A DNA stretch of 64,000 bases from Bugula neritina (lineage: Eukaryota; Animalia; Bryozoa). Made by a program: the position numbers and the translations under genes. This document shows, in pieces, positions 14,322 to 55,377 of the stretch (within the stretch, counting starts at the first letter, position 1; each line of letters opens with the position of its first letter). Where the stretch lies: contig CAXIUT010000126.1 in NCBI GenBank assembly GCA_964035545.1, positions 273,001-337,000 on the forward strand. Direction: 5' to 3'. Below the pieces are notes generated by a model. The model had not been told where the DNA came from, searched no databases, and saw nothing but the letters and a program-made list of their open reading frames with translations.

Positions 14322-14379
14322 TCATCAAAGGTATTTAATAACACAAGGACATTAGAAAATGCCAAGGAGGCGATGATGA

Positions 14380-14418
14380 GGCCCATTGCGCTATAGCCTA
14401 GCTAGTCATGCGCGGGCC
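14380..14418 (-). other. 3'UTR stem-loop, putative RT-recognition hairpin
   Basis: Minus strand GGCCC-GCGC-ATGAC-TAGC-TAG-GCTA-TA-GCGC-AAT-GGGCC gives three nested helices (GGCCC/GGGCC, GCGC/GCGC, TAGC/GCTA). Confidence 0.7.
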
Positions 14419-14476
14419 AACACGAGCTGACAGCGACTCTATCCAGAAAAATACAAAAAAATACAACTATTCTAAC

Positions 14477-14482
14477 ATGTTT
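14477..14482 (+). other. Right target-site duplication ATGTTT
   Basis: tctaac|ATGTTT|ccatatg; the satellite resumes as in the empty-site copies. Confidence 0.85.
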
Positions 14483-26231: not shown

Positions 26232-29200
26232 AAATATACTGCAACATACTGAAATACACTGCTACATACTGAAATATACTGCAACACATTGAAATATACA
26301 GCAACATACTGAAATATACTGCGACACATTGCAATATACTGCAACATACTGAAATATGCTGTAGCATACCGAAATGCACTGCAACATACTGAAATACCCT
26401 GCTGCATACTGAAATACACTGCACCATACTGAAATACGCTGTAACATATTGAAATACACTGCAACACATTGAAATATACTGCAACATACCGAAATATATG
26501 GTAAACTACTGAAATACACTTTAACACATTGAAAAATACTGCAACATACTGAAATATACTGTAACACACTGAAATATACTACAACATACTGAAATACACT
26601 GTAACACACTGAAATATACTGCAACATACTGAAATACACTGTAACATACTGAAATATACTGCAACATACTGAAATACACTGTAACATACTGAAATACACT
26701 GCAACATACTACAACATATTGAAATACACTGCAACAGATTGAAATATACTGAAACATACCTAAATATACGGTAATATACCGAAAAATACTGTAACATATT
26801 GAAACATACTGCAATATACTGAAATACACTGTAACATACTGAAATACACTGCAAATTACTAGAACATATTGAAATACACTGCAACACATTGAAACATACT
26901 GCAACATACCTAAATATATGGTAATATACTGAAAAACACTGTAACACATTGAAATATACAGCAACATACTGAAATATACTGCGACACATTGCGATATACT
27001 GCAACATACTGAAATATGCTGTAGCATACTGAAATGCACTGCAACATACTGAAATACCCTGCTACATACTGAAATAAACTGCAACATACTGAAATACAAT
27101 GTAATATACTGAACTACACTGCAACATACTGCAACATACTGGAATATGCTGTAACATATTGAAATACACTGCAACACATTGAAATATACTGCAAGTCGCT
27201 GAAATATAGTGTAATATACGGAAATGTACTGTAACATACTGGAGTAAACTGTAACACACTGAAATACACTGCAACATACTGAAATACACTGTAACTCACT
27301 GAAATATACTGCAACATACTGCAACATACTGAAATACACTGTAACATATTGAAATACACTGCAACACATTGAAATATACTGCTACATACCGAAATATATG
27401 GTAAACTACTGAAATACACTTTAACACATTGAAAAATACTGCAACATACTGAAGTATACTGTAACACACTGAAATATACTACAACATACTGAAATACACT
27501 GTAACACACTGAAATATACTGCAACATACTGGAATACACTGTAACATACTGAAATATACTGCAACATACTGAAATACACTGTAACATACTGAAATACACT
27601 GCAAAAAACTACAACATGCTAAAATACACTGCAACACATTGAAATATACTGCAACATACCGAAATATATGGTAAACTAATGAAATATACTGTAACACATT
27701 GAAAAACACTGCAACAAACTGAAATATACTGCGACAGATTGCAATATACTGTAACATACTGAAATATGCTGTAGCACACTGAAATACACTGCAACTCACT
27801 GAAATATACTGCAACATACTGAAATACACCGTAACATATTGAAACATACTGCAACGTACTGCAACATACTGAAATATACTGCGACACATTGCAATATACT
27901 GCAACATACTGAAATATGCTGTAGCATACTGAAATACACTGCACTATACTGAAATACCCTGCTACATATTGAAATGAACTGCAACACACTGAAATACAAT
28001 GTAATATACTGAATTACACTGCAACACACTGCAACATACCGAAATACGCTGTAACATATTGCAATACACTGCAACACATTGAAATATACTGTAACTCGCT
28101 GAAACATAGTTTAATATACGGAAATGTGTTGTAACATACTGGAAAAAACAGTAACACACTGAAATATACTGCAACATACTGAAATATACTGCAACATACT
28201 GAAATACACTGCTACATACTAAAACATACTGAAATGTACTGCAAGATACTGCAACATACTGAAATACACTGTAACATACTGAAACACACTGCAACATACT
28301 GCATTATACTGACATACACTGGAACAAATTGAAATACACTGCAACTAAATGAAATATACTGCAACACACTGAAACATACGGCAAAATACTGAAATATACT
28401 GCGACATACCTAAATATACGGTAATATACCGAAATACACTGTAACACATTGAAAAATACTGCAAAATACTGAAATACACTGCAACACACTGAAATACACT
28501 GCAAAATACTACAACATGCTCAAATACACTGTAACATATTGATATACACTGCAACACATTGAAATATACTGCAACATACCGAAATATATGGTAAACTACT
28601 GAAATATACTGTAACACCTTGAAAAATACTGCAACATACTGAAATACACTGCGACACATTGCAATATACTGTAACATACTGAAATATACTGTAGCACACT
28701 GAAATACACTGCAACTCACTGAAATATACTGCAAAACACTGAAATACACTGTAACATATTGAAACATACTGCAACATACTGAAATACACTGTAACATACT
28801 GAAATACACTGCAAAATACTACAACATGCTCAAATACACTGTAACATATTGATATACACTGCAACACATTGAAATATACTGCAACATACCGAAATATATG
28901 GTAAACTACTGAAATATACTGTAACACATTGAAAAATACTGCAACATACTGCGACACATTGCAATATTTTGCAACATACTGAAATATGCTGTAGCACACT
29001 GAAATACACTGCAACTCACTGAAATATACTGCAAAATACTGAAATACACTGTAACATATTGAAACATATTGCAACATACTGAAATACACTGTAACATACT
29101 GAAATACACCACAAATTACTAGAACATATTGAAATACACTGCAACACATTGAAATATACTGCAACATACCTAAATATATGGTAATATACTGAAATATACG

Positions 29201-32200
29201 GTAACACATTGAAAAATACTGCAACATACTGAAATACACTGCAAGATACTGCAACATACTGAAATACGCGGCAAAATACTACAACATACTGAAATACACT
29301 GTAACATATTGAAATACACTGCAACACATTGAAATATACTGCAACGTACCGAAATGTGTGGTAAACTACTGAAATATACTGTAACACATTGAAATATACA
29401 GCAACATACTGAAATATACTGCGACACATTGTAATATACTGCAACATACTGAAATATGCTGTAGCATACTGAAATGCACTGCAACATACTGAAATACCCT
29501 GCTACATACTGAAATACACTGCAACATACTGAAATACGCTGTAACATATTGAAATACACTGCAACACATTGAAAAATACTGCAACATACTGAAATATACT
29601 GTAACACACTGAAATATACTACAACATACTGAAATACACTGTAACACACTGAAATATACTGCAACATACTGAAATACACTGTAACATACTGAAATATACT
29701 GCAACATACTGAAATACACTGTAACATACTGAAATACACTGCAACATACTACAACATATTGAAATACACTGCAACACATTGAAATATACTGCAACACACC
29801 GAAATATATGGTAAACTAATGAAATATACTGTAACACATTGAAAAATACTGCAACATACTGAAATATACTGCGACACATTGCAATATACTGTAACATACT
29901 GAAATATGCTGTAGCACACTGAAATACACTGCAACTCACTGAAATATACTGCAACATGCTGAAATACACTGTAACATATTGAAACATACTGCAACATACT
30001 GCAACATACTGAAATACACTGTAACAAACTGAAATACACTGCAAAACACAAGAACATATTGAAATACACTGCAACACATTGAAATATACTGCAACATACT
30101 GTAACACATTGAAAATAACTGCAACATGCTGAAATATACTGCAAGATACTGCAACATACTGAAATACGCCGCAAAATACTACAACATACTGAAATACACT
30201 GTAACATATTGAAATACACTGCAACACATTGAAATATACTGCGACGTCCTGAAATGTATGGTAAACTACTGAAATATACTGTAACACATTGAACAATACT
30301 GCAACATACTGAAATATACTGCGACACATTGCAATATACTGTAACATACTGAAATATGCTGTAGCACACTGAAATACACTGCAACTCACTGAATTATACT
30401 GCAAAATACTGAAATACACTGTAACATATTGAAACATACTGCAACATACTGAAATACACTGTAACATACTGAAATACACTGCAAATTACTAGAACATATT
30501 GAAATACACTGCAACACATTGAAATATACTGCAACATACCTAAATATATGGTAATATACTGAAATATACGGTAACACATTGAAAAATACTGCAAAATACT
30601 GAAATACACTGCAAGATACTGCAACATACTGAAATACGCGGCAAAATACTACAACATACAGAAATACACTGTAACATATTGAAATACACTGCAACACATT
30701 GAAATATACTGCAACGTACCGAAGTGTATGGTAAACTACTGAAATATACTGTAACACATTGAAATATACAGCAACATACTGAAATATACTGCGACACATT
30801 GCAATATACTGCAACATACTGAAATATGCTGTAGCATACTGAAATGCACTGCAACATACTGAAATACCCTGCTACATACTGAAAAACACTGCAACATACT
30901 GAAATACGCTGTAACATATTGAAATACACTGCAACACACTGAAATATACTGCAACATACCGAAATATATGGTAAACTACTGAAATACACTTTAACACATT
31001 GAGAAATACTGCAACATACTGAAATATACTGTAACACACTGAAATATACTACAACATACTGAAATACACTGTAACACACTGAAATATACTGCAACATACT
31101 GAAATACACTGTAACATACTGAAATATACTGCAACATACTGAAATACACTGTAACATACTGAAATACACTGCAACATACTACAACATATTGAAATACACT
31201 GCAACAGATTGAAATATACTGAAACATACCTAAATACACGGTAATATACCGAAATATACTGTAACACATTGAAAAATACTGCAAAATACTGAAGTACACT
31301 GCAACACACTGAAATATTCTGCAAAAAACTACAACATGCTGAAATACACTGTAACATATTGAAATATACTGCAACATACCGAAATATATGGTAAACTAAT
31401 GAAATATACTGTAACACATTGAAAAACACTGCAACAAACTGAAATATACTGCGACAGATTGCAATATACTGTAACATACTGAAATATGCTGTAGCACACT
31501 GAAATACACTGCAACTCACTGAAATATACTGCAACATACTGAAATACACCGTAACATATTGAAACATACTGCAACGTACTGCAACATACTGAAATATACT
31601 GCGACACATTGCAATATACTGCAACATACTGAAATATGCTGTAGCATACTGAAATACACTGCACTATACTGAAATACCCTGCTACATATTGAAATGAACT
31701 GCAACACACTGAAATACAATGTAATATACTGAATTACACTGCAACACACTGCAACATACCGAAATACGCTGTAACATATTGCAATACACTGCAACACATT
31801 GAAATATACTGTAACTCGCTGAAATATAGTTTAATATACGGAAATGTGTTGTAACATACTGGAAAAAACAGTAACACACTGAAATATACTGCAACATACT
31901 GAAATATACTGCAACATACTGAAATACACTGCTACATACTAAAACATACTGAAATGTACTGCAAGATACTGCAACATACTGAAATACACTGTAACATACT
32001 GAAACACACTGCAACATACTGCATTATACTGACATACACTGGAACAAATTGAAATACACTGCAACTAAATGAAATATACTGCAACACACTGAAACATACG
32101 GCAACATACTGAAATATACTGCGACATACCTAAATATACGGTAATATACCGAAATACACTGTAACACATTGAAAAATACTGCAAAATACTGAAATACACT

Positions 32201-35200
32201 GCAACACACTGAAATACACTGCAAAATACTACAACATGCTCAAATACACTGTAACATATTGATATACACTGCAACACATTGAAATATACTGCAACATACC
32301 GAAATATATGGTAAACTACTGAAATATACTGTAACACCTTGAAAAATACTGCAACATACTGAAATACACTGCGACACATTGCAATATACTGTAACATACT
32401 GAAATATACTGTAGCACACTGAAATACACTGCAACTCACTGAAATATACTGCAAAACACTGAAATACACTGTAACATATTGAAACATACTGCAACATACT
32501 GAAATACACTGTAACATACTGAAATACACTGCAAAATACTACAACATGCTCAAATACACTGTAACATATTGATATACACTGCAACACATTGAAATATACT
32601 GCAACATACCGAAATATATGGTAAACTACTGAAATATACTGTAACACATTGAAAAATACTGCAACATACTGCGACACATTGCAATATTTTGCAACATACT
32701 GAAATATGCTGTAGCACACTGAAATACACTGCAACTCAATGAAATATACTGCAAAATACTGAAATACACTGTAACATATTGAAACATATTGCAACATACT
32801 GAAATACACTGTAACATACTGAAATACACCACAAATTACTAGAACATATTGAAATACACTGCAACACATTGAAATATACTGCAACATACCTAAATATATG
32901 GTAATATACTGAAATATACGGTAACACATTGAAAAATACTGCAACATACTGAAATACACTGCAAGATACTGCAACATACTGAAATACGCGGCAAAATACT
33001 ACAACATACTGAAATACACTGTAACATATTGAAATACACTGCAACACATTGAAATATACTGCAACGTACCGAAATGTATGGTAAACTACTGAAATATACT
33101 GTAACACATTGAAATATACAGCAACATACTGAAATATACTGCGACACATTGTAATATACTGCAACATACTGAAATATGCTGTAGCATACTGAAATGCACT
33201 GCAACATACTGAAATACCCTGCTACATACTGAAATACACTGCAACATACTGAAATACGCTGTAACATATTGAAATACACTGCAACACATTGAAAAATACT
33301 GCAACATACTGAAATATACTGTAACACACTGAAATATACTACAACATACTGAAATACACTGTAACACACTGAAATATACTGCAACATACTGAAATACACT
33401 GTAACATACTGAAATATACTGCAACATACTGAAATACACTGTAACATACTGAAATACACTGCAACATACTACAACATATTGAAATACACTGCAACACATT
33501 GAAATATACTGCAACACACCGAAATATATGGTAAACTAATGAAATATACTGTAACACATTGAAAAATATTGCAACATACTGAAATATACTGCGACACATT
33601 GCAATATACTGTAACATACTGAAATATGCTGTAGCACACTGAAATACACTGCAACTCACTGAAATATACTGCAACATGCTGAAATACACTGTAACATATT
33701 GAAACATACTGCAACATACTGCAACATACTGAAATACACTGTAACAAACTGAAATACACTGCAAAACACAAGAACATATTGAAATACACTGCAACACATT
33801 GAAATATACTGCAACATACTGTAACACATTGAAAATAACTGCAACATGCTGAAATATACTGCAAGATACTGCAACATACTGAAATACGCCGCAAAATACT
33901 ACAACATACTGAAATACACTGTAACATATTGAAATACACTGCAACACATTGAAATATACTGCGACGTCCTGAAATGTATGGTAAACTACTGAAATATACT
34001 GTAACACATTGAACAATACTGCAACATACTGAAATATACTGCGACACATTGCAATATACTGTAACACACTGAAATATGTTGTAGCACACTGAAATTTACT
34101 GCAACTCACTGAAATATACTGCAACATACTGAAATACACTGCTACATACTGAAATATACTGCAACACATTGAAATATACAGCAACATACTGAAATATACT
34201 GCGACACATTGCAGTATACTGCAACATAGTGAAATATGCTGTAGCATACCGAAATGCACTGCAACATACTGAAATACCCTGCTGCATACTGAAATACACT
34301 GCACCATACTGAAATACGCTGTAACATATTGAAATACACTGCAACACATTGAAATATACTGCAACATACCGAAATATATGGTAAACTACTGAAATACACT
34401 TTAACACATTGAAAAATACTGCAACATACTGAAATACACCGTAACATATTGAAACATACTGCAACGTACTGCAACATACTGAAATATACTGCGACACATT
34501 GCAATATACTGCAACATACTGAAATATGCTGTAGCATACTGAAATACACTGCACTATACTGAAATACCCTGCTACATATTGAAATGAACTGCAACACACT
34601 GAAATACAATGTAATATACTGAATTACACTGCAACACACTGCAACATACCGAAATACGCTGTAACATATTGCAATACACTGCAACACATTGAAATATACT
34701 GTAACTCGCTGAAATATAGTTTAATATACGGAAATGTGTTGTAACATACTGGAAAAAACAGTAACACACTGAAATATACTGCAACATACTGAAATATATT
34801 GCAACATACTGAAATACACTGCTACATACTAAAACATACTGAAATGTACTGCAAGATACTGCAACATACTGAAATACACTGTAACATACTGAAACACACT
34901 GCAACATACTGCATTATACTGACATACACTGGAACAAATTGAAATACACTGCAACTAAATGAAATATACTGCAACACACTGAAACATACGGCAACATACT
35001 GAAATATACTGCGACATACCTAAATATACGGTAATATACCGAAATACACTGTAACACATTTAAAAAATACTGCAAAATACTGAAATACACTGCAACACAC
35101 TGAAATACACTGCAAAATACTACAACATGCTCAAATACACTGTAACATTTTGATATACACTGCAACACATTGAAATATACTGCAACATACCGAAATATAT

Positions 35201-38200
35201 GGTAAACTACTGAAATATACTGTAACACCTTGAAAAATACTGCAACATACTGAAATACACTGCGACACATTGCAATATACTGTAACATACTGAAATATGC
35301 TGTAGCACACTGAAATACACTGCAACTCACTGAAATATACTGCAAAATACTGAAATACACTGTAACATATTGAAACATACTGCAACATACTGAAATACAC
35401 TGTAACATACTGAAATACACTGCAAAATACTACAACATGCTCAAATACACTGTAACATATTGATATACACTGCAACACATTGAAATATACTGCAACATAC
35501 CGAAATATATGGTAAACTACTGAAATATACTGTAACACATTGAAAAATACTGCAACATACTGCGACACATTGCAATATTTTGCAACATACTGAAATATGC
35601 TGTAGCACACTGAAATACACTGCAACTCACTGAAATATACTGCAAAATACTGAAATACACTGTAACATATTGAAACATATTGCAACATACTGAAATACAC
35701 TGTAACATACTGAAATACACCACAAATTACTAGAACATATTGAAATACACTGCAACACATTGAAATATACTGCAACATACTGAAATATACTGCGACACAT
35801 TGTAATATACTGCAACATACTGAAATATGCTGTAGCATACTGAAATGCACTGCAACATACTGAAATACCCTGCTACATACTGAAATACACTGCAACATAC
35901 TGAAATACGCTGTAACATATTGAAATACACTGCAACACATTGAAAAATACTGCAACATACTGAAATATACTGTAACACACTGAAATATACTACAACATAC
36001 TGAAATACACTGTAACACACTGAAATATACTGCAACATACTGAAATACACTGTAACATACTGAAATATACTGCAACATACTGAAATACACTGTAACATAC
36101 TGAAATACACTGCAACATACTACAACATATTGAAATACACTGCAACACATTGAAATATACTGCAACACACCGAAATATATGGTAAACTAATGAAATATAC
36201 TGTAACACATTGAAAAATACTGCAACATACTGAAATATACTGCGACACATTGCAATATACTGTAACATACTGAAATATGCTGTAGCACACTGAAATACAC
36301 TGCAACTCACTGAAATATACTGCAACATGCTGAAATACACTGTAACATATTGAAACATACTGCAACATACTGCAACATACTGAAATACACTGTAACAAAC
36401 TGAAATACACTGCAAAACACAAGAACATATTGAAATACACTGCAACACATTGAAATATACTGCAACATACTGTAACACATTGAAAATAACTGCAACATGC
36501 TGAAATATACTGCAAGATACTGCAACATACTGAAATACGCCGCAAAATACTACAACATACTGAAATACACTGTAACATATTGAAATACACTGCAACACAT
36601 TGAAATATACTGCGACGTCCTGAAATGTATGGTAAACTACTGAAATATACTGTAACACATTGAACAATACTGCAACATACTGAAATATACTGCGACACAT
36701 TGCAATATACTGTAACATACTGAAATATGCTGTAGCACACTGAAATACACTGCAACTCACTGAATTATACTGCAAAATACTGAAATACACTGTAACATAT
36801 TGAAACATACTGCAACATACTGAAATACACTGTAACATACTGAAATACACTGCAAATTACTAGAACATATTGAAATACACTGCAACACATTGAAATATAC
36901 TGCAACATACCTAAATATATGGTAATATACTGAAATATACGGTAACACATTGAAAAATACTGCAACATACTGAAATACACTGCAAGATACTGCAACATAC
37001 TGAAATACGCGGCAAAATACTACAACATACAGAAATACACTGTAACATATTGAAATACACTGCAACACATTGAAATATACTGCAACATACCGAAATATAT
37101 GGTAAACTACTGAAATACACTTTAACACATTGAAAAATACTGCAACATACTGAAATATACTGTAACACACTGAAATATACTACAACATACTGAAATACAC
37201 TGTAACACACTGAAATATACTGCAACATACTGAAATACACTGTAACATACTGAAATATACTGCAACATACTGAAATACACTTTAACATACTGAAATACAC
37301 TGCAACATACTACAACATATTGAAATACACTGCAACAGATTGAAATATACTGAAACATACCTAAATATACGGTAATATACCGAAAAATACTGTAACATAT
37401 TGAAACATACTGCAACATACTGAAATACACTGTAACATACTGAAATACACTGCAAATTACTAGAACATATTGAAATACACTGCAACACATTGAAACATAC
37501 TGCAACATACCTAAATATATGGTAATATACTGAAAAACACTGTAACACAATGAAATATACAGCAACATACTGAAATATACTGCGACACATTGCGATATAC
37601 TGCAACATACTGAAATATGCTGTAGCATACTGAAATGCACTGCAACATACTGAAATACCCTGCTACATACTGAAATAAACTGCAACATACTGAAATACAA
37701 TGTAATATACTGAACTACACTGCAACATACTGCAACATACTGGAATATGCTGTAACATATTGAAATACACTGCAACACATTGAAATATACTGCAAGTCGC
37801 TGAAATATAGTGTAATATACGGAAATGTACTGTAACATACTGGAGTAAACTGTAACACACTGAAATACACTGCAACACACTGAAATACACTGTAACTCAC
37901 TGAAATATACTGCAACATACTGCAACATACTGAAATACACTGTAACATACTGAAACACACTGCAACACACTGCATTATACTGACATACACTGGAACAAAT
38001 TGAAATACACTGCAACTAAATGAAATATACTGCAACACACTGAAACATACGGCAAAATACTGAAATATACTGCGACATACCTAAATATACGGTAATATAC
38101 CGAAATACACTGTAACACATTGAAAAATACTGCAAAATACTGAAATACACTGCAACACACTGAAATACACTGCAAAATACTACAACATGCTCAAATACAC

Positions 38201-41200
38201 TGTAACATATTGATATACACTGCAACACATTGAAATATACTGCAACATACCGAAATATATGGTAAACTACTGAAATATACTGTAACACCTTGAAAAATAC
38301 TGCAACATACTGAAATACACTGCGACACATTGCAATATACTGTAACATACTGAAATATACTGTAGCACACTGAAATACACTGCAACTCACTGAAATATAC
38401 TGCAAAACACTGAAATACACTGTAACATATTGAAACATACTGCAACATACTGAAATACACTGTAACATACTGAAATACACTGCAAAATACAACAACATGC
38501 TCAAATACACTGTAACATATTGATATACACTGCAACACATTGAAATATACTGCAACATACCGAAATATATGGTAAACTACTGAAATATACTGTAACACAT
38601 TGAAAAATACTGCAACATACTGCGACACATTGCAATATTTTGCAACATACTGAAATATGCTGTAGCACACTGAAATACACTGCAACTCACTGAAATATAC
38701 TGCAAAATACTGAAATACACTGTAACATATTGAAACATATTGCAACATACTGAAATACACTGTAACATACTGAAATACACCACAAATTACTAGAACATAT
38801 TGAAATACACTGCAACACATTGAAATATACTGCAACATACCTAAATATATGGTAATATACTGAAATATACGGTAACACATTGAAAAATACTGCAACATAC
38901 TGAAATACACTGCAAGATACTGCAACATACTGAAATACGCGGCAAAATACTACAACATACTGAAATACACTGTAACATATTGAAATACACTGCAACACAT
39001 TGAAATATACTGCAACGTACCGAAATGTGTGGTAAACTACTGAAATATACTGTAACACATTGAAATATACAGCAACATACTGAAATATACTGCGACACAT
39101 TGTAATATACTGCAACATACTGAAATATGCTGTAGCATACTGAAATGCACTGCAACATACTGAAATACCCTGCTACATACTGAAATACACTGCAACATAC
39201 TGAAATACGCTGTAACATATTGAAATACACTGCAACACATTGAAAAATACTGCAACATACTGAAATATACTGTAACACACTGAAATATACTACAACATAC
39301 TGAAATACACTGTAACACACTGAAATATACTGCAACATACTGAAATACACTGTAACATACTGAAATATACTGCAACATACTGAAATACACTGTAACATAC
39401 TGAAATACACTGCAACATACTACAACATATTGAAATACACTGCAACACATTGAAATATACTGCAACACACCGAAATATATGGTAAACTAATGAAATATAC
39501 TGTAACACATTGAAAAATACTGCAACATACTGAAATATACTGCGACACATTGCAATATACTGTAACATACTGAAATATGCTGTAGCACACTGAAATACAC
39601 TGCAACTCACTGAAATATACTGCAACATGCTGAAATACACTGTAACATATTGAAACATACTGCAACATACTGCAACATACTGAAATACACTGTAACAAAC
39701 TGAAATACACTGCAAAACACAAGAACATATTGAAATACACTGCAACACATTGAAATATACTGCAACATACTGTAACACATTGAAAATAACTGCAACATGC
39801 TGAAATATACTGCAAGATACTGCAACATAATGAAATACGCCGCAAAATACTACAACATACTGAAATACACTGTAACATATTGAAATACACTGCAACACAT
39901 TGAAATATACTGCGACGTCCTGAAATGTATGGTAAACTACTGAAATATACTGTAACACATTGAACAATACTGCAACATACTGAAATATACTGCGACACAT
40001 TGCAATATACTGTAACATACTGAAATATGCTGTAGCACACTGAAATACACTGCAACTCACTGAATTATACTGCAAAATACTGAAATACACTGTAACATAT
40101 TGAAACATACTGCAACATACTGAAATACACTGTAACATACTGAAATACACTGCAAATTACTAGAACATATTGAAATACACTGCAACACATTGAAATATAC
40201 TGCAACATACCTAAATATATGGTAATATACTGAAATATACGGTAACACATTGAAAAATACTGCAAAATACTGAAATACACTGCAAGATACTGCAACATAC
40301 TGAAATACGCGGCAAAATACTACAACATACAGAAATACACTGTAACATATTGAAATACACTGCAACACATTGAAATATACTGCAACGTACCGAAGTGTAT
40401 GGTAAACTACTGAAATATACTGTAACACATTGAAATATACAGCAACATACTGAAATATACTGCGACACATTGCAATATACTGCAACATACTGAAATATGC
40501 TGTAGCATACTGAAATGCACTGCAACATACTGAAATACCCTGCTACATACTGAAAAACACTGCAACATACTGAAATACGCTGTAACATATTGAAATACAC
40601 TGCAACACACTGAAATATACTGCAACATACCGAAATATATGGTAAACTACTGAAATACACTTTAACACATTGAGAAATACTGCAACATACTGAAATATAC
40701 TGTAACACACTGAAATATACTACAACATACTGAAATACACTGTAACACACTGAAATATACTGCAACATACTGAAATACACTGTAACATACTGAAATATAC
40801 TGCAACATACTGAAATACACTGTAACATACTGAAATACACTGCAACATACTACAACATATTGAAATACACTGCAACAGATTGAAATATACTGAAACATAC
40901 CTAAATACACGGTAATATACCGAAATATACTGTAACACATTGAAAAATACTGCAAAATACTGAAGTACACTGCAACACACTGAAATATTCTGCAAAAAAC
41001 TACAACATGCTGAAATACACTGTAACATATTGAAATATACTGCAACATACCGAAATATATGGTAAACTAATGAAATATACTGTAACACATTGAAAAACAC
41101 TGCAACAAACTGAAATATACTGCGACAGATTGCAATATACTGTAACATACTGAAATATGCTGTAGCACACTGAAATACACTGCAACTCACTGAAATATAC

Positions 41201-44200
41201 TGCAACATACTGAAATACACCGTAACATATTGAAACATACTGCAACGTACTGCAACATACTGAAATATACTGCGACACATTGCAATATACTGCAACATAC
41301 TGAAATATGCTGTAGCATACTGAAATACACTGCACTATACTGAAATACCCTGCTACATATTGAAATGAACTGCAACACACTGAAATACAATGTAATATAC
41401 TGAATTACACTGCAACACACTGCAACATACCGAAATACGCTGTAACATATTGCAATACACTGCAACACATTGAAATATACTGTAACTCGCTGAAATATAG
41501 TTTAATATACGGAAATGTGTTGTAACATACTGGAAAAAACAGTAACACACTGAAATATACTGCAACATACTGAAATATACTGCAACATACTGAAATACAC
41601 TGCTACATACTAAAACATACTGAAATGTACTGCAAGATACTGCAACATACTGAAATACACTGTAACATACTGAAACACACTGCAACATACTGCATTATAC
41701 TGACATACACTGGAACAAATTGAAATACACTGCAACTAAATGAAATATACTGCAACACACTGAAACATACGGCAACATACTGAAATATACTGCGACATAC
41801 CTAAATATACGGTAATATACCGAAATACACTGTAACACATTGAAAAATACTGCAAAATACTGAAATACACTGCAACACACTGAAATACACTGCAAAATAC
41901 TACAACATGCTCAAATACACTGTAACATATTGATATACACTGCAACACATTGAAATATACTGCAACATGCCGAAATATATGGTAAACTACTGAAATATAC
42001 TGTAACACCTTGAAAAATACTGCAACATACTGAAATACACTGCGACACATTGCAATATACTGTAACATACTGAAATATACTGTAGCACACTGAAATACAC
42101 TGCAACTCACTGAAATATACTGCAAAACACTGAAATACACTGTAACATATTGAAACATACTGCAACATACTGAAATACACTGTAACATACTGAAATACAC
42201 TGCAAAATACTACAACATGCTCAAATACACTGTAACATATTGATATACACTGCAACACATTGAAATATACTGCAACATACCGAAATATATGGTAAACTAC
42301 TGAAATATACTGTAACACATTGAAAAATACTGCAACATACTGCGACACATTGCAATATTTTGCAACATACTGAAATATGCTGTAGCACACTGAAATACAC
42401 TGCAACTCAATGAAATATACTGCAAAATACTGAAATACACTGTAACATATTGAAACATATTGCAACATACTGAAATACACTGTAACATACTGAAATACAC
42501 CACAAATTACTAGAACATATTGAAATACACTGCAACACATTGAAATATACTGCAACATACCTAAATATATGGTAATATACTGAAATATACAGTAACACAT
42601 TGAAAAATACTGCAACATACTGAAATACACTGCAAGATACTGCAACATACTGAAATACGCGGCAAAATACTACAACATACTGAAATACACTGTAACATAT
42701 TGAAATACACTGCAACACATTGAAATATACTGCAACGTACCGAAATGTATGGTAAACTACTGAAATATACTGTAACACATTGAAATATACAGCAACATAC
42801 TGAAATATACTGCGACACATTGTAATATACTGCAACATACTGAAATATGCTGTAGCATACTGAAATGCACTGCAACATACTGAAATACCCTGCTACATAC
42901 TGAAATACACTGCAACATACTGAAATACGCTGTAACATATTGAAATACACTGCAACACATTGAAAAATACTGCAACATACTGAAATATACTGTAACACAC
43001 TGAAATATACTACAACATACTGAAATACACTGTAACACACTGAAATATACTGCAACATACTGAAATACACTGTAACATACTGAAATATACTGCAACATAC
43101 TGAAATACACTGTAACATACTGAAATACACTGCAACATACTACAACATATTGAAATACACTGCAACACATTGAAATATACTGCAACACACCGAAATATAT
43201 GGTAAACTAATGAAATATACTGTAACACATTGAAAAATATTGCAACATACTGAAATATACTGCGACACATTGCAATATACTGTAACATACTGAAATATGC
43301 TGTAGCACACTGAAATACACTGCAACTCACTGAAATATACTGCAACATGCTGAAATACACTGTAACATATTGAAACATACTGCAACATACTGCAACATAC
43401 TGAAATACACTGTAACAAACTGAAATACACTGCAAAACACAAGAACATATTGAAATACACTGCAACACATTGAAATATACTGCAACATACTGTAACACAT
43501 TGAAAATAACTGCAACATGCTGAAATATACTGCAAGATACTGCAACATACTGAAATACGCCGCAAAATACTACAACATACTGAAATACACTGTAACATAT
43601 TGAAATACACTGCAACACATTGAAATATACTGCGACGTCCTGAAATGTATGGTAAACTACTGAAATATACTGTAACACATTGAACAATACTGCAACATAC
43701 TGAAATATACTGCGACACATTGCAATATACTGTAACACACTGAAATATGTTGTAGCACACTGAAATTTACTGCAACTCACTGAAATATACTGCAACATAC
43801 TGAAATACACTGCTACATACTGAAATATACTGCAACACATTGAAATATACAGCAACATACTGAAATATACTGCGACACATTGCAGTATACTGCAACATAG
43901 TGAAATATGCTGTAGCATACCGAAATGCACTGCAACATACTGAAATACCCTGCTGCATACTGAAATACACTGCACCATACTGAAATACGCTGTAACATAT
44001 TGAAATACACTGCAACACATTGAAATATACTGCAACATACCGAAATATATGGTAAACTACTGAAATACACTTTAACACATTGAAAAATACTGCAACATAC
44101 TGAAATACACCGTAACATATTGAAACATACTGCAACGTACTGCAACATACTGAAATATACTGCGACACATTGCAATATACTGCAACATACTGAAATATGC

Positions 44201-47200
44201 TGTAGCATACTGAAATACACTGCACTATACTGAAATACCCTGCTACATATTGAAATGAACTGCAACACACTGAAATACAATGTAATATACTGAATTACAC
44301 TGCAACACACTGCAACATACCGAAATACGCTGTAACATATTGCAATACACTGCAACACATTGAAATATACTGTAACTCGCTGAAATATAGTTTAATATAC
44401 GGAAATGTGTTGTAACATACTGGAAAAAACAGTAACACACTGAAATATACTGCAACATACTGAAATATATTGCAACATACTGAAATACACTGCTACATAC
44501 TAAAACATACTGAAATGTACTGCAAGATACTGCAACATACTGAAATACACTGTAACATACTGAAACACACTGCAACATACTGCATTATACTGACATACAC
44601 TGGAACAAATTGAAATACACTGCAACTAAATGAAATATACTGCAACACACTGAAACATACGGCAACATACTGAAATATACTGCGACATACCTAAATATAC
44701 GGTAATATACCGAAATACACTGTAACACATTTAAAAAATACTGCAAAATACTGAAATACACTGCAACACACTGAAATACACTGCAAAATACTACAACATG
44801 CTCAAATACACTGTAACATTTTGATATACACTGCAACACATTGAAATATACTGCAACATACCGAAATATATGGTAAACTACTGAAATATACTGTAACACC
44901 TTGAAAAATACTGCAACATACTGAAATACACTGCGACACATTGCAATATACTGTAACATACTGAAATATGCTGTAGCACACTGAAATACACTGCAACTCA
45001 CTGAAATATACTGCAAAATACTGAAATACACTGTAACATATTGAAACATACTGCAACATACTGAAATACACTGTAACATACTGAAATACACTGCAAAATA
45101 CTACAACATGCTCAAATACACTGTAACATATTGATATACACTGCAACACATTGAAATATACTGCAACATACCGAAATATATGGTAAACTACTGAAATATA
45201 CTGTAACACATTGAAAAATACTGCAACATACTGCGACACATTGCAATATTTTGCAACATACTGAAATATGCTGTAGCACACTGAAATACACTGCAACTCA
45301 CTGAAATATACTGCAAAATACTGAAATACACTGTAACATATTGAAACATATTGCAACATACTGAAATACACTGTAACATACTGAAATACACCACAAATTA
45401 CTAGAACATATTGAAATACACTGCAACACATTGAAATATACTGCAACATACTGAAATATACTGCGACACATTGTAATATACTGCAACATACTGAAATATG
45501 CTGTAGCATACTGAAATGCACTGCAACATACTGAAATACCCTGCTACATACTGAAATACACTGCAACATACTGAAATACGCTGTAACATATTGAAATACA
45601 CTGCAACACATTGAAAAATACTGCAACATACTGAAATATACTGTAACACACTGAAATATACTACAACATACTGAAATACACTGTAACACACTGAAATATA
45701 CTGCAACATACTGAAATACACTGTAACATACTGAAATATACTGCAACATACTGAAATACACTGTAACATACTGAAATACACTGCAACATACTACAACATA
45801 TTGAAATACACTGCAACACATTGAAATATACTGCAACACACCGAAATATATGGTAAACTAATGAAATATACTGTAACACATTGAAAAATACTGCAACATA
45901 CTGAAATATACTGCGACACATTGCAATATACTGTAACATACTGAAATATGCTGTAGCACACTGAAATACACTGCAACTCACTGAAATATACTGCAACATG
46001 CTGAAATACACTGTAACATATTGAAACATACTGCAACATACTGCAACATACTGAAATACACTGTAACAAACTGAAATACACTGCAAAACACAAGAACATA
46101 TTGAAATACACTGCAACACATTGAAATATACTGCAACATACTGTAACACATTGAAAATAACTGCAACATGCTGAAATATACTGCAAGATACTGCAACATA
46201 CTGAAATACGCCGCAAAATACTACAACATACTGAAATACACTGTAACATATTGAAATACACTGCAACACATTGAAATATACTGCGACGTCCTGAAATGTA
46301 TGGTAAACTACTGAAATATACTGTAACACATTGAACAATACTGCAACATACTGAAATATACTGCGACACATTGCAATATACTGTAACATACTGAAATATG
46401 CTGTAGCACACTGAAATACACTGCAACTCACTGAATTATACTGCAAAATACTGAAATACACTGTAACATATTGAAACATACTGCAACATACTGAAATACA
46501 CTGTAACATACTGAAATACACTGCAAATTACTAGAACATATTGAAATACACTGCAACACATTGAAATATACTGCAACATACCTAAATATATGGTAATATA
46601 CTGAAATATACGGTAACACATTGAAAAATACTGCAACATACTGAAATACACTGCAAGATACTGCAACATACTGAAATACGCGGCAAAATACTACAACATA
46701 CAGAAATACACTGTAACATATTGAAATACACTGCAACACATTGAAATATACTGCAACATACCGAAATATATGGTAAACTACTGAAATACACTTTAACACA
46801 TTGAAAAATACTGCAACATACTGAAATATACTGTAACACACTGAAATATACTACAACATACTGAAATACACTGTAACACACTGAAATATACTGCAACATA
46901 CTGAAATACACTGTAACATACTGAAATATACTGCAACATACTGAAATACACTTTAACATACTGAAATACACTGCAACATACTACAACATATTGAAATACA
47001 CTGCAACAGATTGAAATATACTGAAACATACCTAAATATACGGTAATATACCGAAAAATACTGTAACATATTGAAACATACTGCAACATACTGAAATACA
47101 CTGTAACATACTGAAATACACTGCAAATTACTAGAACATATTGAAATACACTGCAACACATTGAAACATACTGCAACATACCTAAATATATGGTAATATA

Positions 47201-50200
47201 CTGAAAAACACTGTAACACAATGAAATATACAGCAACATACTGAAATATACTGCGACACATTGCGATATACTGCAACATACTGAAATATGCTGTAGCATA
47301 CTGAAATGCACTGCAACATACTGAAATACCCTGCTACATACTGAAATAAACTGCAACATACTGAAATACAATGTAATATACTGAACTACACTGCAACATA
47401 CTGCAACATACTGGAATATGCTGTAACATATTGAAATACACTGCAACACATTGAAATATACTGCAAGTCGCTGAAATATAGTGTAATATACGGAAATGTA
47501 CTGTAACATACTGGAGTAAACTGTAACACACTGAAATACACTGCAACACACTGAAATACACTGTAACTCACTGAAATATACTGCAACATACTGCAACATA
47601 CTGAAATACACTGTAACATATTGAAATACACTGCAACACATTGAAATATACTGCTCCATACCGAAATATATGGTAAACTACTGAAATACACTTTAACACA
47701 TTGAAAAATACTGCAACATACTGAAGTATACTGTAACACACTGAAATATACTACAACATACTGAAATACACTGTAACACACTGAAATATACTGCAACATA
47801 CTGGAATACACTGTAACATACTGAAATATACTGCAACATACTGAAATATGCTGTAGCATACTGAAATACACTGCACTATACTGAAATACCCTGCTACATA
47901 TTGAAATGAACTGCAACACACTGAAATACAATGTAATATACTGAATTACACTGCAACACACTGCAACATACCGAAATACGCTGTAACATATTGCAATACA
48001 CTGCAACACATTGAAATATACTGTAACTCGCTGAAATATAGTTTAATATACGGAAATGTGTTGTAACATACTGGAAAAAACAGTAACACACTGAAATATA
48101 CTGCAACATACTGAAATATACTGCAACATACTGAAATACACTGCTACATACTAAAACATACTGAAATGTACTGCAAGATACTGCAACATACTGAAATACA
48201 CTGTAACATACTGAAACACACTGCAACATACTGCATTATACTGACATACACTGGAACAAATTGAAATACACTGCAACTAAATGAAATATACTGCAACACA
48301 CTGAAACATACGGCAACATACTGAAATATACTGCGACATACCTAAATATACGGTAATATACCGAAATACACTGTAACACATTGAAAAATACTGCAAAATA
48401 CTGAAATACACTGCAACACACTGAAATACACTGCAAAATACTACAACATGCTCAAATACACTGTAACATATTGATATACACTGCAACACATTGAAATATA
48501 CTGCAACATACCGAAATATATGGTAAACTACTGAAATATACTGTAACACCTTGAAAAATACTGCAACATACTGAAATACACTGCGACACATTGCAATATA
48601 CTGTAACATACTGAAATATACTGTAGCACACTGAAATACACTGCAACTCACTGAAATATACTGCAAAACACTGAAATACACTGTAACATATTGAAACATA
48701 CTGCAACATACTGAAATACACTGTAACATACTGAAATACACTGCAAAATACTACAACATGCTCAAATACACTGTAACATATTGATATACACTGCAACACA
48801 TTGAAATATACTGCAACATACCGAAATATATGGTAAACTACTGAAATATACTGTAACACATTGAAAAATACTGCAACATACTGCGACACATTGCAATATT
48901 TTGCAACATACTGAAATATGCTGTAGCACACTGAAATACACTGCAACTCACTGAAATATACTGCAAAATACTGAAATACACTGTAACATATTGAAACATA
49001 TTGCAACATACTGAAATACACTGTAACATACTGAAATACACCACAAATTACTAGAACATATTGAAATACACTGCAACACATTGAAATATACTGCAACATA
49101 CCTAAATATATGGCAATATATTGAAATATACGGTAACACATTGAAAAATACTGCAACATACTGAAATACACTGCAAGATACTGCAACATACTGAAATACG
49201 CGGCAAAATACTACAACATACTGAAATACACTGTAACATATTGAAATACACTGCAACACATTGAAATATACTGCAACGTACCGAAATGTGTGGTAAACTA
49301 CTGAAATATACTGTAACACATTGAAGTATACAGCAACATACTGAAATATACTGCGACACATTGTAATATACTGCAACATACTGAAATATGCTGTAGCATA
49401 CTGAAATGCACTGCAACATACTGAAATACCCTGCTACATACTGAAATACACTGCAACATACTGAAATACGCTGTAACATATTGAAATACACTGCAACACA
49501 TTGAAAAATACTGCAACATACTGAAATATACTGTAACACACTGAAATATACTACAACATACTGAAATACACTGTAACACACTGAAATATGCTGCAACATA
49601 CTGAAATACACTGTAACATACTGAAATATACTGCAACATACTGAAATACACTGCAACATACTACAACATATTGAAATACACTGCAACACATTGAAATATA
49701 CTGCAACACACCGAAATATATGGTAAACTAATGAAATATACTGTAACACATTGAAAAATACTGCAACATACTGAAATATACTCCGACACATTGCAATATA
49801 CTGTAACATACTGAAATATGCTGTAGCGCAACTGAAATACACTGCAACTCACTGAAATATACTGCAACATGCTGAAATACACTGTAACATATTGAAACAT
49901 ACTGCAACATACTGCAACATACTGAAATACACTGTAACAAACTGAAATACACTGCAAAACACAAGAACATATTGAAATACACTGCAACACATTGAAATAT
50001 ACTGCAACATACTGTAACACATTGAAAATAACTGCAACATGCTGAAATATACTGCAAGATACTGCAACATACTGAAATAGGCCGCAAAATACTACAACAT
50101 ACTGAAATACACTGTAACATATTGAAATACACTGCAACACATTGAAATATACTGCGACGTCCTGAAATGTATGGTAAACTACTGAAATATACTGTAACAC

Positions 50201-53200
50201 ATTGAACAATACTGCAACATACTGAAATATACTGCGACACATTGCAATATACTGTAACATACTGAAATATGCTGTAGCACACTGAAATACACTGCAACTC
50301 ACTGAATTATACTGCAAAATACTGAAATACACTGTAACATATTGAAACATACTGCAACATACTGAAATACACTGTAACATACTGAAATACACTGCAAATT
50401 ACTAGAACATATTGAAATACACTGCAACACATTGAAATATACTGCAACATACCTAAATATATGGTAATATACTGAAATATACGGTAACACATTGAAAAAT
50501 ACTGCAACATACTGAAATACACTGCAAGATACTGCAACATACTGAAATACGCGGCAAAATACTACAACATACAGAAATACACTGTAACATATTGAAATAC
50601 ACTGCAACACATTGAAATATACTGCAACGTACCGAAGTGTATGGTAAACTACTGAAATATACTGTAACACATTGAAATATACAGCAACATACTGAAATAT
50701 ACTGCGACACATTGCAATATACTGCAACATACTGAAATATGCTGTAGCATACTGAAATGCACTGCAATATACTGAAATACCCTGCTACATACTGAAATAC
50801 ACTGCAACATACTGAAATACGCTGTAACATATTGAAATACACTGCAACACACTAAAATATACTGCAACATACCGAAATATATGGTAAACTACTGAAATAC
50901 ACTTTAACACATTGAGAAATACTGCAACATACTGAAATATACTGTAACACACTGAAATATACTACAACATACTGAAATACACTGTAACACACTGAAATAT
51001 ACTGCAACATACTGAAATACACTGTAACATACTGAAATATACTGCAACATACTGAAATACACTGTAACATACTGAAATACACTGCAACATACTACAACAT
51101 ATTGAAATACACTGCAACAGATTGAAATATACTGAAACATACCTAAATACACGGTAATATACCGAAATATACTGTAACACATTGAAAAATACTGCAAAAT
51201 ACTGAAGTACACTGCAACACACTGAAATATTCTGCAAAAAACTACAACATGCTGAAATACACTGTAACATATTGAAATATACTGCAACATACCGAAATAT
51301 ATGGTAAACTAATGAAATATACTGTAACACATTGAAAAACACTGCAACAAACTGAAATATACTGCGACAGATTGCAATATACTGTAACATACTGAAATAT
51401 GCTGTAGCACACTGAAATACACTGCAACTCACTGAAATATACTGCAACATACTGAAATACACCGTAACATATTGAAACATACTGCAACGTACTGCAACAT
51501 ACTGAAATATACTGCGACACATTGCAATATACTGCAACATACTGAAATATGCTGTAGCATACTGAAATACACTGCACTATACTGAAATACCCTGCTACAT
51601 ATTGAAATGAACTGCAACACACTGAAATACAATGTAATATACTGAATTACACTGCAACACACTGCAACATACCGAAATACGCTGTAACATATTGCAATAC
51701 ACTGCAACACATTGAAATATACTGTAACTCGCTGAAATATAGTTTAATATACGGAAATGTGTTGTAACATACTGGAAAAAACAGTAACACACTGAAATAT
51801 ACTGCAACATACTGAAATATACTGCAACATACTGAAATACACTGCTACATACTAAAACATACTGAAATGTACTGCAAGATACTGCAACATACTGAAATAC
51901 ACTGTAACATACTGAAACACACTGCAACACACTGCATTATACTGACAGACACTGGAACAAATTGAAATACACTGCAACTAAATGAAATATACTGCAACAC
52001 ACTGAAACATACGGCAACATACTGAAATATACTGCGACATACCTAAATATACGGTAATATACCGAAATACACTGTAACACATTGAAAAATACTGCAAAAT
52101 ACTGAAATACACTGCAACACACTGAAATACACTGCAAAATACTACAACATGCTCAAATACACTGTAACATATTGATATACACTGCAACACATTGAAATAT
52201 ACTGCAACATACCGAAATATATGGTAAACTACTGAAATATACTGTAACACCTTGAAAAATACTGCAACATACTGAAATACACTGCGACACATTGCAATAT
52301 ACTGTAACATACTGAAATATACTGTAGCACACTGAAATACACTGCAACTCACTGAAATATACTGCAAAACACTGAAATACACTGTAACATATTGAAACAT
52401 ACTGCAACATACTGAAATACACTGTAACATACTGAAATACACTGCAAAATACTACAACATGCTCAAATACACTGTAACATATTGATATACACTGCAACAC
52501 ATTGAAATATACTGCAACATACCGAAATATATGGTAAACTACTGAAATATACTGTAACACATTGAAAAATACTGCAACATACTGCGACACATTGCAATAT
52601 TTTGCAACATACTGAAATATGCTGTAGCACACTGAAATACACTGCAACTCAATGAAATATACTGCAAAATACTGAAATACACTGTAACATATTGAAACAT
52701 ATTGCAACATACTGAAATACACTGTAACATACTGAAATACACCACAAATTACTAGAACATATTGAAATACACTGCAACACATTGAAATATACTGCAACAT
52801 ACCTAAATATATGGTAATATACTGAAATATACGGTAACACATTGAAAAATACTGCAACATACTGAAATACACTGCAAGATACTGCAACATACTGAAATAC
52901 GCGGCAAAATACTACAACATACTGAAATACACTGTAACATATTGAAATACACTGCAACACATTGAAATATACTGCAACGTACCGAAATGTATGGTAAACT
53001 ACTGAAATATACTGTAACACATTGAAATATACAGCAACATACTGAAATATACTGCGACACATTGTAATATACTGCAACATACTGAAATATGCTGTAGCAT
53101 ACTGAAATGCACTGCAACATACTGAAATACCCTGCTACATACTGAAATACACTGCAACATACTGAAATACGCTGTAACATATTGAAATACACTGCAACAC

Positions 53201-55377
53201 ATTGAAAAATACTGCAACATACTGAAATATACTGTAACACACTGAAATATACTACAACATACTGAAATACACTGTAACACACTGAAATATACTGCAACAT
53301 ACTGAAATACACTGTAACATACTGAAATATACTGCAACATACTGAAATACACTGTAACATACTGAAATACACTGCAACATACTACAACATATTGAAATAC
53401 ACTGCAACACATTGAAATATACTGCAACACACCGAAATATATGGTAAACTAATGAAATATACTGTAACACATTGAAAAATATTGCAACATACTGAAATAT
53501 ACTGCGACACATTGCAATATACTGTAACATACTGAAATATGCTGTAGCACACTGAAATACACTGCAACTCACTGAAATATACTGCAACATGCTGAAATAC
53601 ACTGTAACATATTGAAACATACTGCAACATACTGCAACATACTGAAATACACTGTAACAAACTGAAATACACTGCAAAACACAAGAACATATTGAAATAC
53701 ACTGCAACACATTGAAATATACTGCAACATACTGTAACACATTGAAAATAACTGCAACATGCTGAAATATACTGCAAGATACTGCAACATACTGAAATAC
53801 GCTGCAAAATACTACAACATACTGAAATACACTGTAACATATTGAAATACACTGCAACACATTGAAATATACTGCGACGTCCTGAAATGTATGGTAAACT
53901 ACTGAAATATACTGTAACACATTGAACAATACTGCAACATACTGAAATATACTGCGACACATTGCAATATACTGTAACACACTGAAATATGTTGTAGCAC
54001 ACTGAAATTTACTGCAACTCACTGAAATATACTGCAACATACTGAAATACACTGCTACATACTGAAATATACTGCAACACATTGAAATATACAGCAACAT
54101 ACTGAAATATACTGCGACACATTGCAATATACTGCAACATACTGAAATATGCTGTAGCATACCGAAATGCACTGCAACATACTGAAATACCCTGCTGCAT
54201 ACTGAAATACACTGCACCATACTGAAATACGCTGTAACATATTGAAATACACTGCAACACATTGAAATATACAGCAACATACCGAAATATATGGTAAACT
54301 ACTGAAATACACTTTAACACATTGAAAAATACTGCAACATACTGAAATACACCGTAACATATTGAAACATACTGCAACGTACTGCAACATACTGAAATAT
54401 ACTGCGACACATTGCAATATACTGCAACATACTGAAATATGCTGTAGCATACTGAAATACACTGCACTATACTGAAATACCCTGCTACATATTGAAATGA
54501 ACTGCAACACACTGAAATACAATGTAATATACTGAATTACACTGCAACACACTGCAACATACCGAAATACGCTGTAACATATTGCAATACACTGCAACAC
54601 ATTGAAATATACTGTAACTCGCTGAAATATAGTTTAATATACGGAAATGTGTTGTAACATACTGGAAAAAACAGTAACACACTGAAATATACTGCAACAT
54701 ATTGAAATATATTGCAACATACTGAAATACACTGCTACATACTAAAACATACTGAAATGTACTGCAAGATACTGCAACATACTGAAATACACTGTAACAT
54801 ACCGAAACACACTGCAACATACTGCATTATACTGACATACACTGGAACAAATTGAAATACACTGCAACTAAATGAAATATACTGCAACACACTGAAACAT
54901 ACGGCAACATACTGAAATATACTGCGACATACCTAAATATACGGTAATATACCGAAATACACTGTAACACATTTAAAAAATACTGCAAAATACTGAAATA
55001 CACTGCAACACACTGAAATACACTGCAAAATACTACAACATGCTCAAATACACTGTAACATATTGATATACACTGCAACACATTGAAATATACTGCAACA
55101 TACCGAAATATATGGTAAACTACTGAAATATACTGTAACACCTTGAAAAATACTGCAACATACTGAAATACACTGCGACACATTGCAATATACTGTAACA
55201 TACTGAAATATGCTGTAGCACACTGAAATACACTGCAACTCACTGAAATATACTGCAAAATACTGAAATACACTGTAACATATTGAAACATACTGCAACA
55301 TACTGAAATACACTGTAACATACTGAAATACACTGCAAAATACTACAACATGCTCAAATACACTGTAACATATTGAT
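26232..55377 (-). repeat. Same satellite in inverted orientation (ATACTGCAAC ATACTGAAAT on +); 29,146-bp inverted block
   Basis: The sequence switches abruptly to the reverse complement at 26232 (gttgcagtgta|aaatatactgcaac) and back at 55378 (catattgat|cagtgagttgcag). The ORF track flips to the minus strand over this interval. Confidence 0.98.
28250..47600 (-). repeat. Tandem duplication of a 9671-bp unit (~28250-37920 and ~37921-47600); boundaries approximate
   Basis: Constant 9671 offset in the ORF track (28304/37975, 31682/41353, 34914/44585, 37663/47334) and shared rare variants. Confidence 0.9.

What the first reader, a model, noticed from the sequence alone, without database searches (positions are those of the whole stretch)
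26232..55377. A single, base-resolved reciprocal 29-kb inversion inside the satellite array
Seen in sequence: using intact HOR copies as templates, the left arm ends at 26231 (= 9821, the first A of atatcaatat). The far end of the inverted block, 55377, corresponds to 9823. The near end, 26232, corresponds to 874 (gttgcagtatattt|), and the right arm starts at 55378 = 875 (cagtgagttgcagtaa). Flipping 26232-55377 therefore restores both contexts, losing only one T (9822 equivalent). There is at most 1 bp of microhomology. Inference: two double-strand breaks were rejoined by end-joining, not by recombination between pre-existing inverted copies. The junctions are single-copy in this window, so the event is probably recent and possibly polymorphic.
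Basis: partly seen in the sequence, partly recalled or inferred. Interest (0 to 1): 0.8.

Follow-up and report, generated by a model that had tools for sequence, protein, structure and literature searches.

The report
Clean 29-kb inversion inside a satellite
A 29,146-base stretch of a simple 10/20-base satellite repeat lies flipped end to end with only one base lost, which looks like two chromosome breaks rejoined the wrong way round: a clean but ordinary kind of rearrangement, and no sequencing read has yet confirmed it.

Summary
The whole window is one 10/20-bp satellite. Its strand switches at only two places, 26231|26232 and 55377|55378. Reverse-complementing 26232-55377 restores both contexts.

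- **Join 1:** the restored join aligns collinearly over 4,666 bp at 99.66% to intact copies. The single gap is the missing T that corresponds to position 9822.
- **Join 2:** the restored join matches seven templates almost perfectly, from 318 nt on one side to at least 1,072 nt on the other, with no gap at the join.
- **Variant phase:** six diagnostic variant sites keep the same haplotype across join 1.
- **No homology at the breaks:** the two break sites show no inverted homology (score 10; background 9.8 +/- 0.8). Microhomology is 0 bp at the left join and at most 1 bp at the right.
- **Not a fold-back:** the arms are not mirror images (74-85% identity).

This fits a reciprocal two-break inversion sealed by end joining.

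The inversion is younger than the split of repeat copies that differ by about 0.3%.

This is a known kind of event and of modest interest.

The parts
1..26231 (+). Left arm: satellite (10-bp unit, 20-bp dimer) in plus orientation, with HOR periods of about 5.8-5.96 kb. It ends at the base equivalent to 9821, 15779 and 21600.
26231..26232 (.). J-left: a zero-spacer join of A-left (..gttgcagtgta) to rc(B-left) (aaatatactgcaac..). It has 0 bp of microhomology. The junction 22-mer is unique in the window.
26221..26245 (.). Local palindrome created by the join: an 11-bp stem with one G-T pair and a loop AAA at 26232-26234. A 140-nt DNA fold gives -36.1 kcal/mol, z -9.9.
26232..55377 (-). Inverted block of 29,146 bp, all satellite in minus orientation. 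Once flipped it holds most of three HOR copies of about 9.7-10.2 kb.
55377..55378 (.). J-right: a join of rc(A-right) (..catattgat) to B-right (cagtgagttgcag..). Microhomology is at most 1 bp (the T at 55377). The junction 19-mer is unique in the window.
55378..64000 (+). Right arm: satellite in plus orientation, with a 3.81-kb HOR from 56502. It starts at the base equivalent to 875.
9821..9823 (+). Intact template of break site A (gtgta|T|atcaat). Equivalent intact copies lie at 15779-15781 and 21600-21602. In the block they lie at 35464 and 45135, in minus orientation.
874..875 (+). Intact template of break site B (gtatattt|cagtgag). Equivalent copies lie at 11175/6, 17133/4 and 22954/5. In the block they lie at 34111/2, 43782/3 and 54024/5.

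Best explanation
The array was once a head-to-tail satellite in a single orientation. It suffered two double-strand breaks about 29 kb apart. One fell at ..GTGTA|T|ATCAAT.. (site A) and the other at ..GTATATTT|CAGTGAG.. (site B). The excised segment was religated in reverse orientation by classical, homology-independent end joining, with the loss of a single T.

Shown: the geometry, the reciprocity, the 1-bp loss and the lack of homology at the breaks.

Inferred:
- The repair pathway itself.
- The consequences. The flip creates head-to-head satellite arms that can form hairpins at the joins. It also isolates the block from unequal exchange with its flanks.
- The timing. The event is younger than the duplication that separated the junction-bearing HOR copy from its nearest relatives, which now differ from it by about 0.3%.
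For: - Both joins use the same two sites to the base.
- The restored J1 aligns over 4,666 bp at 99.66% with a single 1-bp gap, and over 7.9 kb at 99.3% to block-internal copies.
- Six of six diagnostic variant sites keep the left-arm haplotype on both sides of J1.
- The restored J2 matches seven templates with 0-2 differences per 100 nt across the join.
- Site A against the reverse complement of site B scores 10, the same as background (9.8 +/- 0.8).
- The arms are only 74-85% mirror-identical, which is the generic similarity of satellite monomers.
- There are no N gaps, no other switches in the window and no foreign sequence at the joins.
- De novo inversions without homology but with short deletions have been read as end joining in mutation-accumulation lines (PMC9977147).
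Against: - No raw read or contig was shown to cross either join. Only 45-90-nt unitigs were available, and none listed bridges 26231|26232.
- The metagenome scan for the J-left 26-mer found nothing. That collection appears to lack the satellite altogether, so the blank says little.
- A perfectly reciprocal flip with an off-by-one loss is also what an editing step in assembly curation could produce.
- The repair pathway is inferred from the junction signature alone.
Confidence: 0.75

Rival explanations
1. Assembly or curation artefact. The block was flipped in silico, or mis-oriented by the assembler, and no such molecule exists.
For: - The read check was inconclusive.
- Exact reciprocity with a one-base loss resembles a coordinate off-by-one.
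- Other notes of this scan report many orientation flips in satellites of this assembly.
Against: - There are no Ns at either join.
- The joins share no overlap or homology that a string graph could mis-thread.
- Chimeric long reads give mirror-image fold-backs, and these arms are not mirror images.
- Two independent chimeras would not be reciprocal to the base.
Confidence: 0.12
2. Real inversion, but neither single nor recent. Either the same roughly 29.1-kb inverted module occurs at least twice on this chromosome because the inverted structure was later duplicated, or breakage recurs at preferred sites.
For: - Ours is 29,146 bp, one 20-bp dimer shorter.
- Note s1-440080 reports rearrangement junctions recurring near ACTGCTACAT on another piece. 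That motif lies at 26258-26267, 26 nt inside the block.
Against: - These are unchecked notes, and the other sequence could not be read here.
- Within the window the junction k-mers are unique.
- The ends of HOR structural blocks do not pile up at A-type or B-type sites.
Confidence: 0.3
3. Replication-based template switching or a fold-back inverted duplication (as in FoSTeS/MMBIR or breakage-fusion-bridge), not breakage and rejoining.
For: - J-left folds into a strong hairpin (-36.1 kcal/mol, z -9.9).
- Satellites are difficult to replicate (general knowledge).
Against: - The two joins are reciprocal and conservative. Nothing is duplicated and 1 bp is lost.
- Microhomology is 0-1 bp.
- The arms are not mirror copies.
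- Any head-to-head join of this satellite would form such a hairpin.
Confidence: 0.05
4. Non-allelic homologous recombination between pre-existing inverted repeats, or a transposon- or recombinase-mediated inversion.
For: After the event the window is full of inverted copies that are 99.6-99.7% identical.
Against: - Before the event the array was unidirectional. Site A against rc(site B) scores at background.
- There is no element, inverted repeat or target duplication at the joins.
- The only non-satellite island is at 14287-14502, far from both joins.
Confidence: 0.03

Closest known systems
Strand switches and inversions inside human centromeric and pericentromeric satellite arrays (beta-satellite, HSat3 and active alpha-satellite HOR arrays, such as the CEN01 inversion)
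   Same: The orientation flips within a single satellite array with no spacer. In the human arrays such switches number in the hundreds, are spread along the arrays and are often polymorphic (10.64898/2026.07.22.740206).
   Different: - This is a 10/20-bp satellite of a marine organism whose name is coded in the tools.
- Both joins can be resolved to one base and shown to be reciprocal, because kilobase-scale HOR variants give unique context.
De novo two-break inversions repaired by non-homologous end joining (for example Chlamydomonas mutation-accumulation lines)
   Same: [quoted passage not shown]
   Different: Those events were seen arising in the laboratory, in mostly unique sequence. Here the event is inferred from a single assembly, inside a satellite.
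Staggered-break inversions that leave inverted duplications at their ends (described for Drosophila; from my own knowledge, not checked here)
   Same: Two breaks, with the segment rejoined in reverse orientation.
   Different: No duplication flanks this block. At most 1 bp could be shared between the two joins.
Fold-back (palindromic) junctions of inverted duplications
   Same: A zero-spacer head-to-head join that can fold into a hairpin.
   Different: The arms are only 74-85% mirror-identical, and a reciprocal second join exists.

Membership tests
Simple reciprocal two-break inversion sealed by end joining | Both joins map to the same two break sites, so that flipping the block restores both contexts | tested here: met
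Simple reciprocal two-break inversion sealed by end joining | Little or no homology at the joins, with small losses or gains only | tested here: met
   0 bp at J-left, at most 1 bp at J-right, and 1 bp lost. The inverted-homology score is at background.
Simple reciprocal two-break inversion sealed by end joining | The joins exist in real DNA molecules | tested here: inconclusive
   Only unitigs of 45-90 nt were available, and none listed bridges 26231|26232. The metagenome scan was uninformative.
Simple reciprocal two-break inversion sealed by end joining | Dependence on the end-joining machinery (Ku, ligase IV) | not testable with these tools
   The pathway is inferred from the junction signature only.
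Inversion by homologous recombination between inverted repeats | Inverted homologous segments at both breakpoints before the event | tested here: not met
   Site A +/-300 against rc(site B +/-300) gives local score 10, against a background of 9.8 +/- 0.8 and a direct control of 221.
Fold-back inverted duplication | Arms that mirror each other at near-identity around a single join, with a gain of copies | tested here: not met
   Mirror identity is 0.74-0.85 at J-left and 0.52-0.76 at J-right (ungapped, over 20-2,000-nt arms), and 0.84 and 0.80 gapped. A reciprocal second join is present.
Staggered-break inversion with flanking inverted duplications | The same sequence present at both ends of the block in opposite orientation | tested here: not met
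   At most 1 bp is shared between the joins.
Transposon- or recombinase-mediated inversion | Element ends, recognition sites or target duplications at the joins | tested here: not met
   The joins are pure satellite. The only foreign island is at 14287-14502.

The most novel reading that the evidence does not exclude
The 29.1-kb inverted block is not a one-off. The same module, or the same pair of break sites, recurs upstream on the same chromosome (29,166 bp against 29,146 bp). In that case the array would carry a higher-order pattern of alternating orientation. That pattern could have arisen by duplication of an already inverted structure, or by breakage that prefers particular variant monomers.
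Probability: 0.25. Interest if true: 0.5.

Novelty: new member of a known kind. Interest (0 to 1): 0.3.

Why it matters
Rearrangements inside satellites can rarely be read to the base, because the copies are too alike. Here kilobase-scale repeat variants give unique context, so both joins of an inversion can be seen. The signature is blunt, free of homology and short by one base. It suggests that breaks in this repeat-dense region were mended by end joining, although kilobases of near-identical template lay nearby.

The flip also makes long inverted arms. These could form hairpins, yield double-stranded RNA if transcribed, and seed further flips by recombination. If the joins prove real and polymorphic, the junction k-mers would be convenient markers for following array haplotypes. 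None of this departs from what is known of satellite arrays in other organisms.

Tried and rejected
- **Reads.** One run search and one laying of four runs on 25732-26731. Only Logan unitigs of 45-90 nt came back, and no listed piece crosses the left join, so the result is inconclusive.
- **Metagenome scans.** The J-left 26-mer gave 0 hits. A control 20-mer from the block side of J-right, which intact copies of site A also carry, gave six chance hits, none of them satellite. The collection therefore lacks this satellite and the blank means nothing.
- **Literature.** A search for the monomer sequence gave only unrelated primer matches.
- **Rfam.** Nothing on the whole window or on the non-satellite island.
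- **Hotspot idea.** The ends of HOR structural blocks do not pile up at A-type or B-type sites. There are only a few replicated coincidences, at -8 nt and +24 nt.
- **Mutation clustering.** No substitutions cluster at the joins. The nearest private changes are 175 nt and 575 nt from J1.
- **Earlier findings.** The search by sequence was blank.

Full report
**What the window is.** All 64,000 bases are one AT-rich satellite (GC about 0.32, no N). The unit is 10 bp and the dimer 20 bp (TTTCAGTATGTTGCAGTATA). The only stretch that is not satellite is about 14287-14502. The monomers are about 72% alike. They are organised in kilobase-scale higher-order repeats (HORs) whose copies are 98-99.9% identical. 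This gives almost every position a unique long-range context.

**The observation.** Plus-strand motifs (TTCAGT, TGCAGT) run at about 45-50 per 2 kb up to 26 kb. They drop to zero between 28 and 54 kb, where their reverse complements take over, and then return.
- Self-alignments end exactly at 26231 and 55377. Segment 7592-9821 and segment 19371-21600 both align directly to 24002-26231. Segments 9823-12257, 15781-18215 and 21602-24036 all align in reverse to 55377-52943, at 99.6-99.7%.
- The block shares no 14-mer with the flanks in the same orientation.
- 97.6% of its 14-mers occur in the flanks as reverse complement.
- The flanks contain no further inverted 14-mers.

The window therefore holds exactly two switches and one inverted block of 29,146 bp.

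**Reciprocity.** Read directly:
- J-left is ..gttgcagtgta joined to aaatatactgcaac..
- J-right is ..catattgat joined to cagtgagttgcag..
- The intact sites are gtgta|T|atcaat (site A) and gtatattt|cagtgag (site B).

So J-left is A-left plus rc(B-left), and J-right is rc(A-right) plus B-right. The T between the two halves of site A is missing.

I reverse-complemented 26232-55377 in silico and tested both restored joins.
- **J1.** It is crossed by 4,666-bp alignments to 7592-12257 (99.66%) and 19371-24036 (99.53%), each with a single gap. Over 120 nt that gap is the one missing T. J1 is also crossed by 7.5-7.9-kb alignments at 99.3% to two copies inside the block.
- **Variant phase at J1.** In a six-copy alignment, three sites left of J1 and three sites right of it separate left-arm copies from block-internal copies. 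At all six, the copy cut by J1 carries the left-arm state. The flip therefore restores variant phase as well as collinearity.
- **J2.** It is crossed by seven templates with 0-2 differences per 100 nt, from 318 nt on the block side to at least 1,072 nt on the right-arm side, with no gap at the join. Further into the block, the near end belongs to a different HOR sub-block (96% to 46535-47875).

**Chance.** The 15-mer around site A occurs 37 times in the window and the 21-mer around site B 66 times. The named templates are therefore several equivalent copies. By my own rough estimate, an unrelated second switch would land within a base of both reciprocal positions with a probability of about 5e-6. 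The long-range phase agreement lowers this further. The junction 22-mer and 19-mer each occur once.

**Mechanism.**
- *Homologous recombination* between inverted copies needs inverted homology at the two sites before the event. Site A +/-300 nt against the reverse complement of site B +/-300 nt scores 10. Random inverted pairs from the same arm give 9.8 +/- 0.8, and the direct control gives 221.
- *A fold-back duplication* needs mirror-image arms. At J-left mirror identity is 0.74-0.85 (0.84 gapped over 1.4 kb). At J-right it is 0.52-0.76 (0.80 gapped). That is at or near the generic similarity of the monomers (compare 72%).
- *Staggered breaks* would leave inverted duplications, but at most one base (the T at 55377) could belong to both sites.
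- *A mobile element* would leave foreign sequence at the joins, and there is none.

What remains is two breaks and a homology-independent religation with one base lost. The same signature was read as non-homologous end joining for de novo inversions in Chlamydomonas mutation-accumulation lines (PMC9977147). The pathway is an inference; the geometry is shown.

**Consequences of the join.** J-left is a local palindrome (GTTGCAGTGTA, loop AAA, TATACTGCAAC). A 140-nt single strand folds at -36.1 kcal/mol (z -9.9). J-right folds at -24 (z -3.1). The intact sites fold no better than shuffles. Any head-to-head join of this satellite in a similar phase would do this, so I read the hairpin as a result of the event and not as its cause. 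The flip also places 2.4-2.8-kb copies that are 99.6-99.7% identical in inverted orientation. These are substrates for further flips by recombination (inference).

**Age.** Alignments that cross restored J1 must predate the inversion, because they join sequence now on opposite strands.
- The closest such relatives differ by 0.34% (15 mismatches and one gap in 4,666 bp).
- The youngest duplications in the window differ by 0.09% (9,742 bp within the block) and 0.14% (5,693 bp in the left arm).
- The cut copy has five private substitutions, none closer than 175 nt to the join.

The event is therefore younger than the roughly 0.3% layer of array turnover. Nothing sets a lower bound.

After flipping, the array shows three HOR domains: about 5.8-5.96 kb, about 9.7-10.2 kb and 3.81 kb. 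J1 cuts the first 10-kb copy 314 nt from its start.

- The run search found the satellite in runs of a coded organism, in a 2016 symbiont metagenome, and in marine plankton and seawater metagenomes.
- All runs are kept as Logan contigs. On this satellite these are unitigs of 45-90 nt, and none of those listed bridges 26231|26232.
- A scan of JGI metagenome contigs for the J-left 26-mer found nothing. A control 20-mer that intact copies of site A also carry found only six unrelated chance matches, so that blank carries no weight.

Against an artefact:
- There are no Ns.
- The joins share no overlap that could mis-thread an assembly graph.
- The arms are not the mirror images that chimeric reads produce.
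- Two independent errors would not be reciprocal to the base.

For an artefact: an editing flip with an off-by-one would look the same. I put it at about 12%.

**Earlier notes of this scan** (unchecked unless stated).
- Another reader saw the same clean switch at 26200-26300 and judged it not a mirror fold-back. I confirm this.
- A second 'exactly reciprocal' inversion of 29,166 bp is noted more than 110 kb upstream on the same piece, next to an rDNA unit. Ours is 29,146 bp, one dimer shorter. I could not read that sequence. If the joins are the same, the inverted module was duplicated after the event and is not single-copy in the genome.
- Another note reports junctions recurring near ACTGCTACAT on another piece. 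That motif lies 26 nt inside our block. Within this window, the ends of HOR blocks do not gather at A-type or B-type sites.
- A follow-up note calls the genome a ciliate's. This window holds no gene to test that.

**Comparison and verdict.** Strand switches inside satellite arrays are well documented. There are hundreds in human beta-satellite and HSat3 arrays, and some lie in active alpha-satellite HOR arrays (10.64898/2026.07.22.740206). This is a new instance of a known kind. It is unusually clean because both joins can be read to the base. No paper matched the satellite's sequence. Interest is modest (0.3). It would rise if the same module or the same break sites prove to recur along the chromosome.

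Noticed in passing
window 14287-14502 (core about 14296-14478, minus strand): The only non-satellite island in the window. It is a short 3' fragment of a non-LTR-like element with an (AAAC)n tail, seen as (GTTT)n at 14296-14315. It sits exactly between two 5.96-kb HOR copies (8519-14211 and 14477-20169, 99.86% identical). It has no Rfam match.
   Followed up: partly
window, flipped coordinates 1-25900, 25917-53752 and 56502-64000: After the in-silico flip the array shows three HOR domains with different periods: about 5.8-5.96 kb, about 9.67-10.24 kb (three copies) and 3.81 kb. The inverted block nearly coincides with the middle domain.
   Followed up: partly
window 26238 (loose ends in run X20): Seven unitigs of another sample match from 26238 onward but are preceded by TTGCAGCGTACTGAAATTC. 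This is a plus-to-minus switch of the satellite that is absent from this window. Other strand-switch joins of this satellite therefore exist elsewhere in the genome or in other strains.
   Followed up: partly
same piece, more than 110 kb upstream of the window (earlier notes s1-438048 and s1-438135): A second reciprocal inversion of 29,166 bp is reported there, with an rDNA unit at an inversion boundary. Its length differs from ours by one 20-bp dimer.
   Followed up: no
runs X1-X22: The satellite is very abundant in runs of the coded organism and in a 2016 symbiont metagenome. It is present at low depth in marine plankton and seawater metagenomes from several studies.
   Followed up: no
window 25907: All four runs laid show G where the window has A. 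In the likely source run the share is 676,682 of 840,252 summed depth. This probably reflects the majority variant among the many paralogous copies and not an error at this copy.
   Followed up: no
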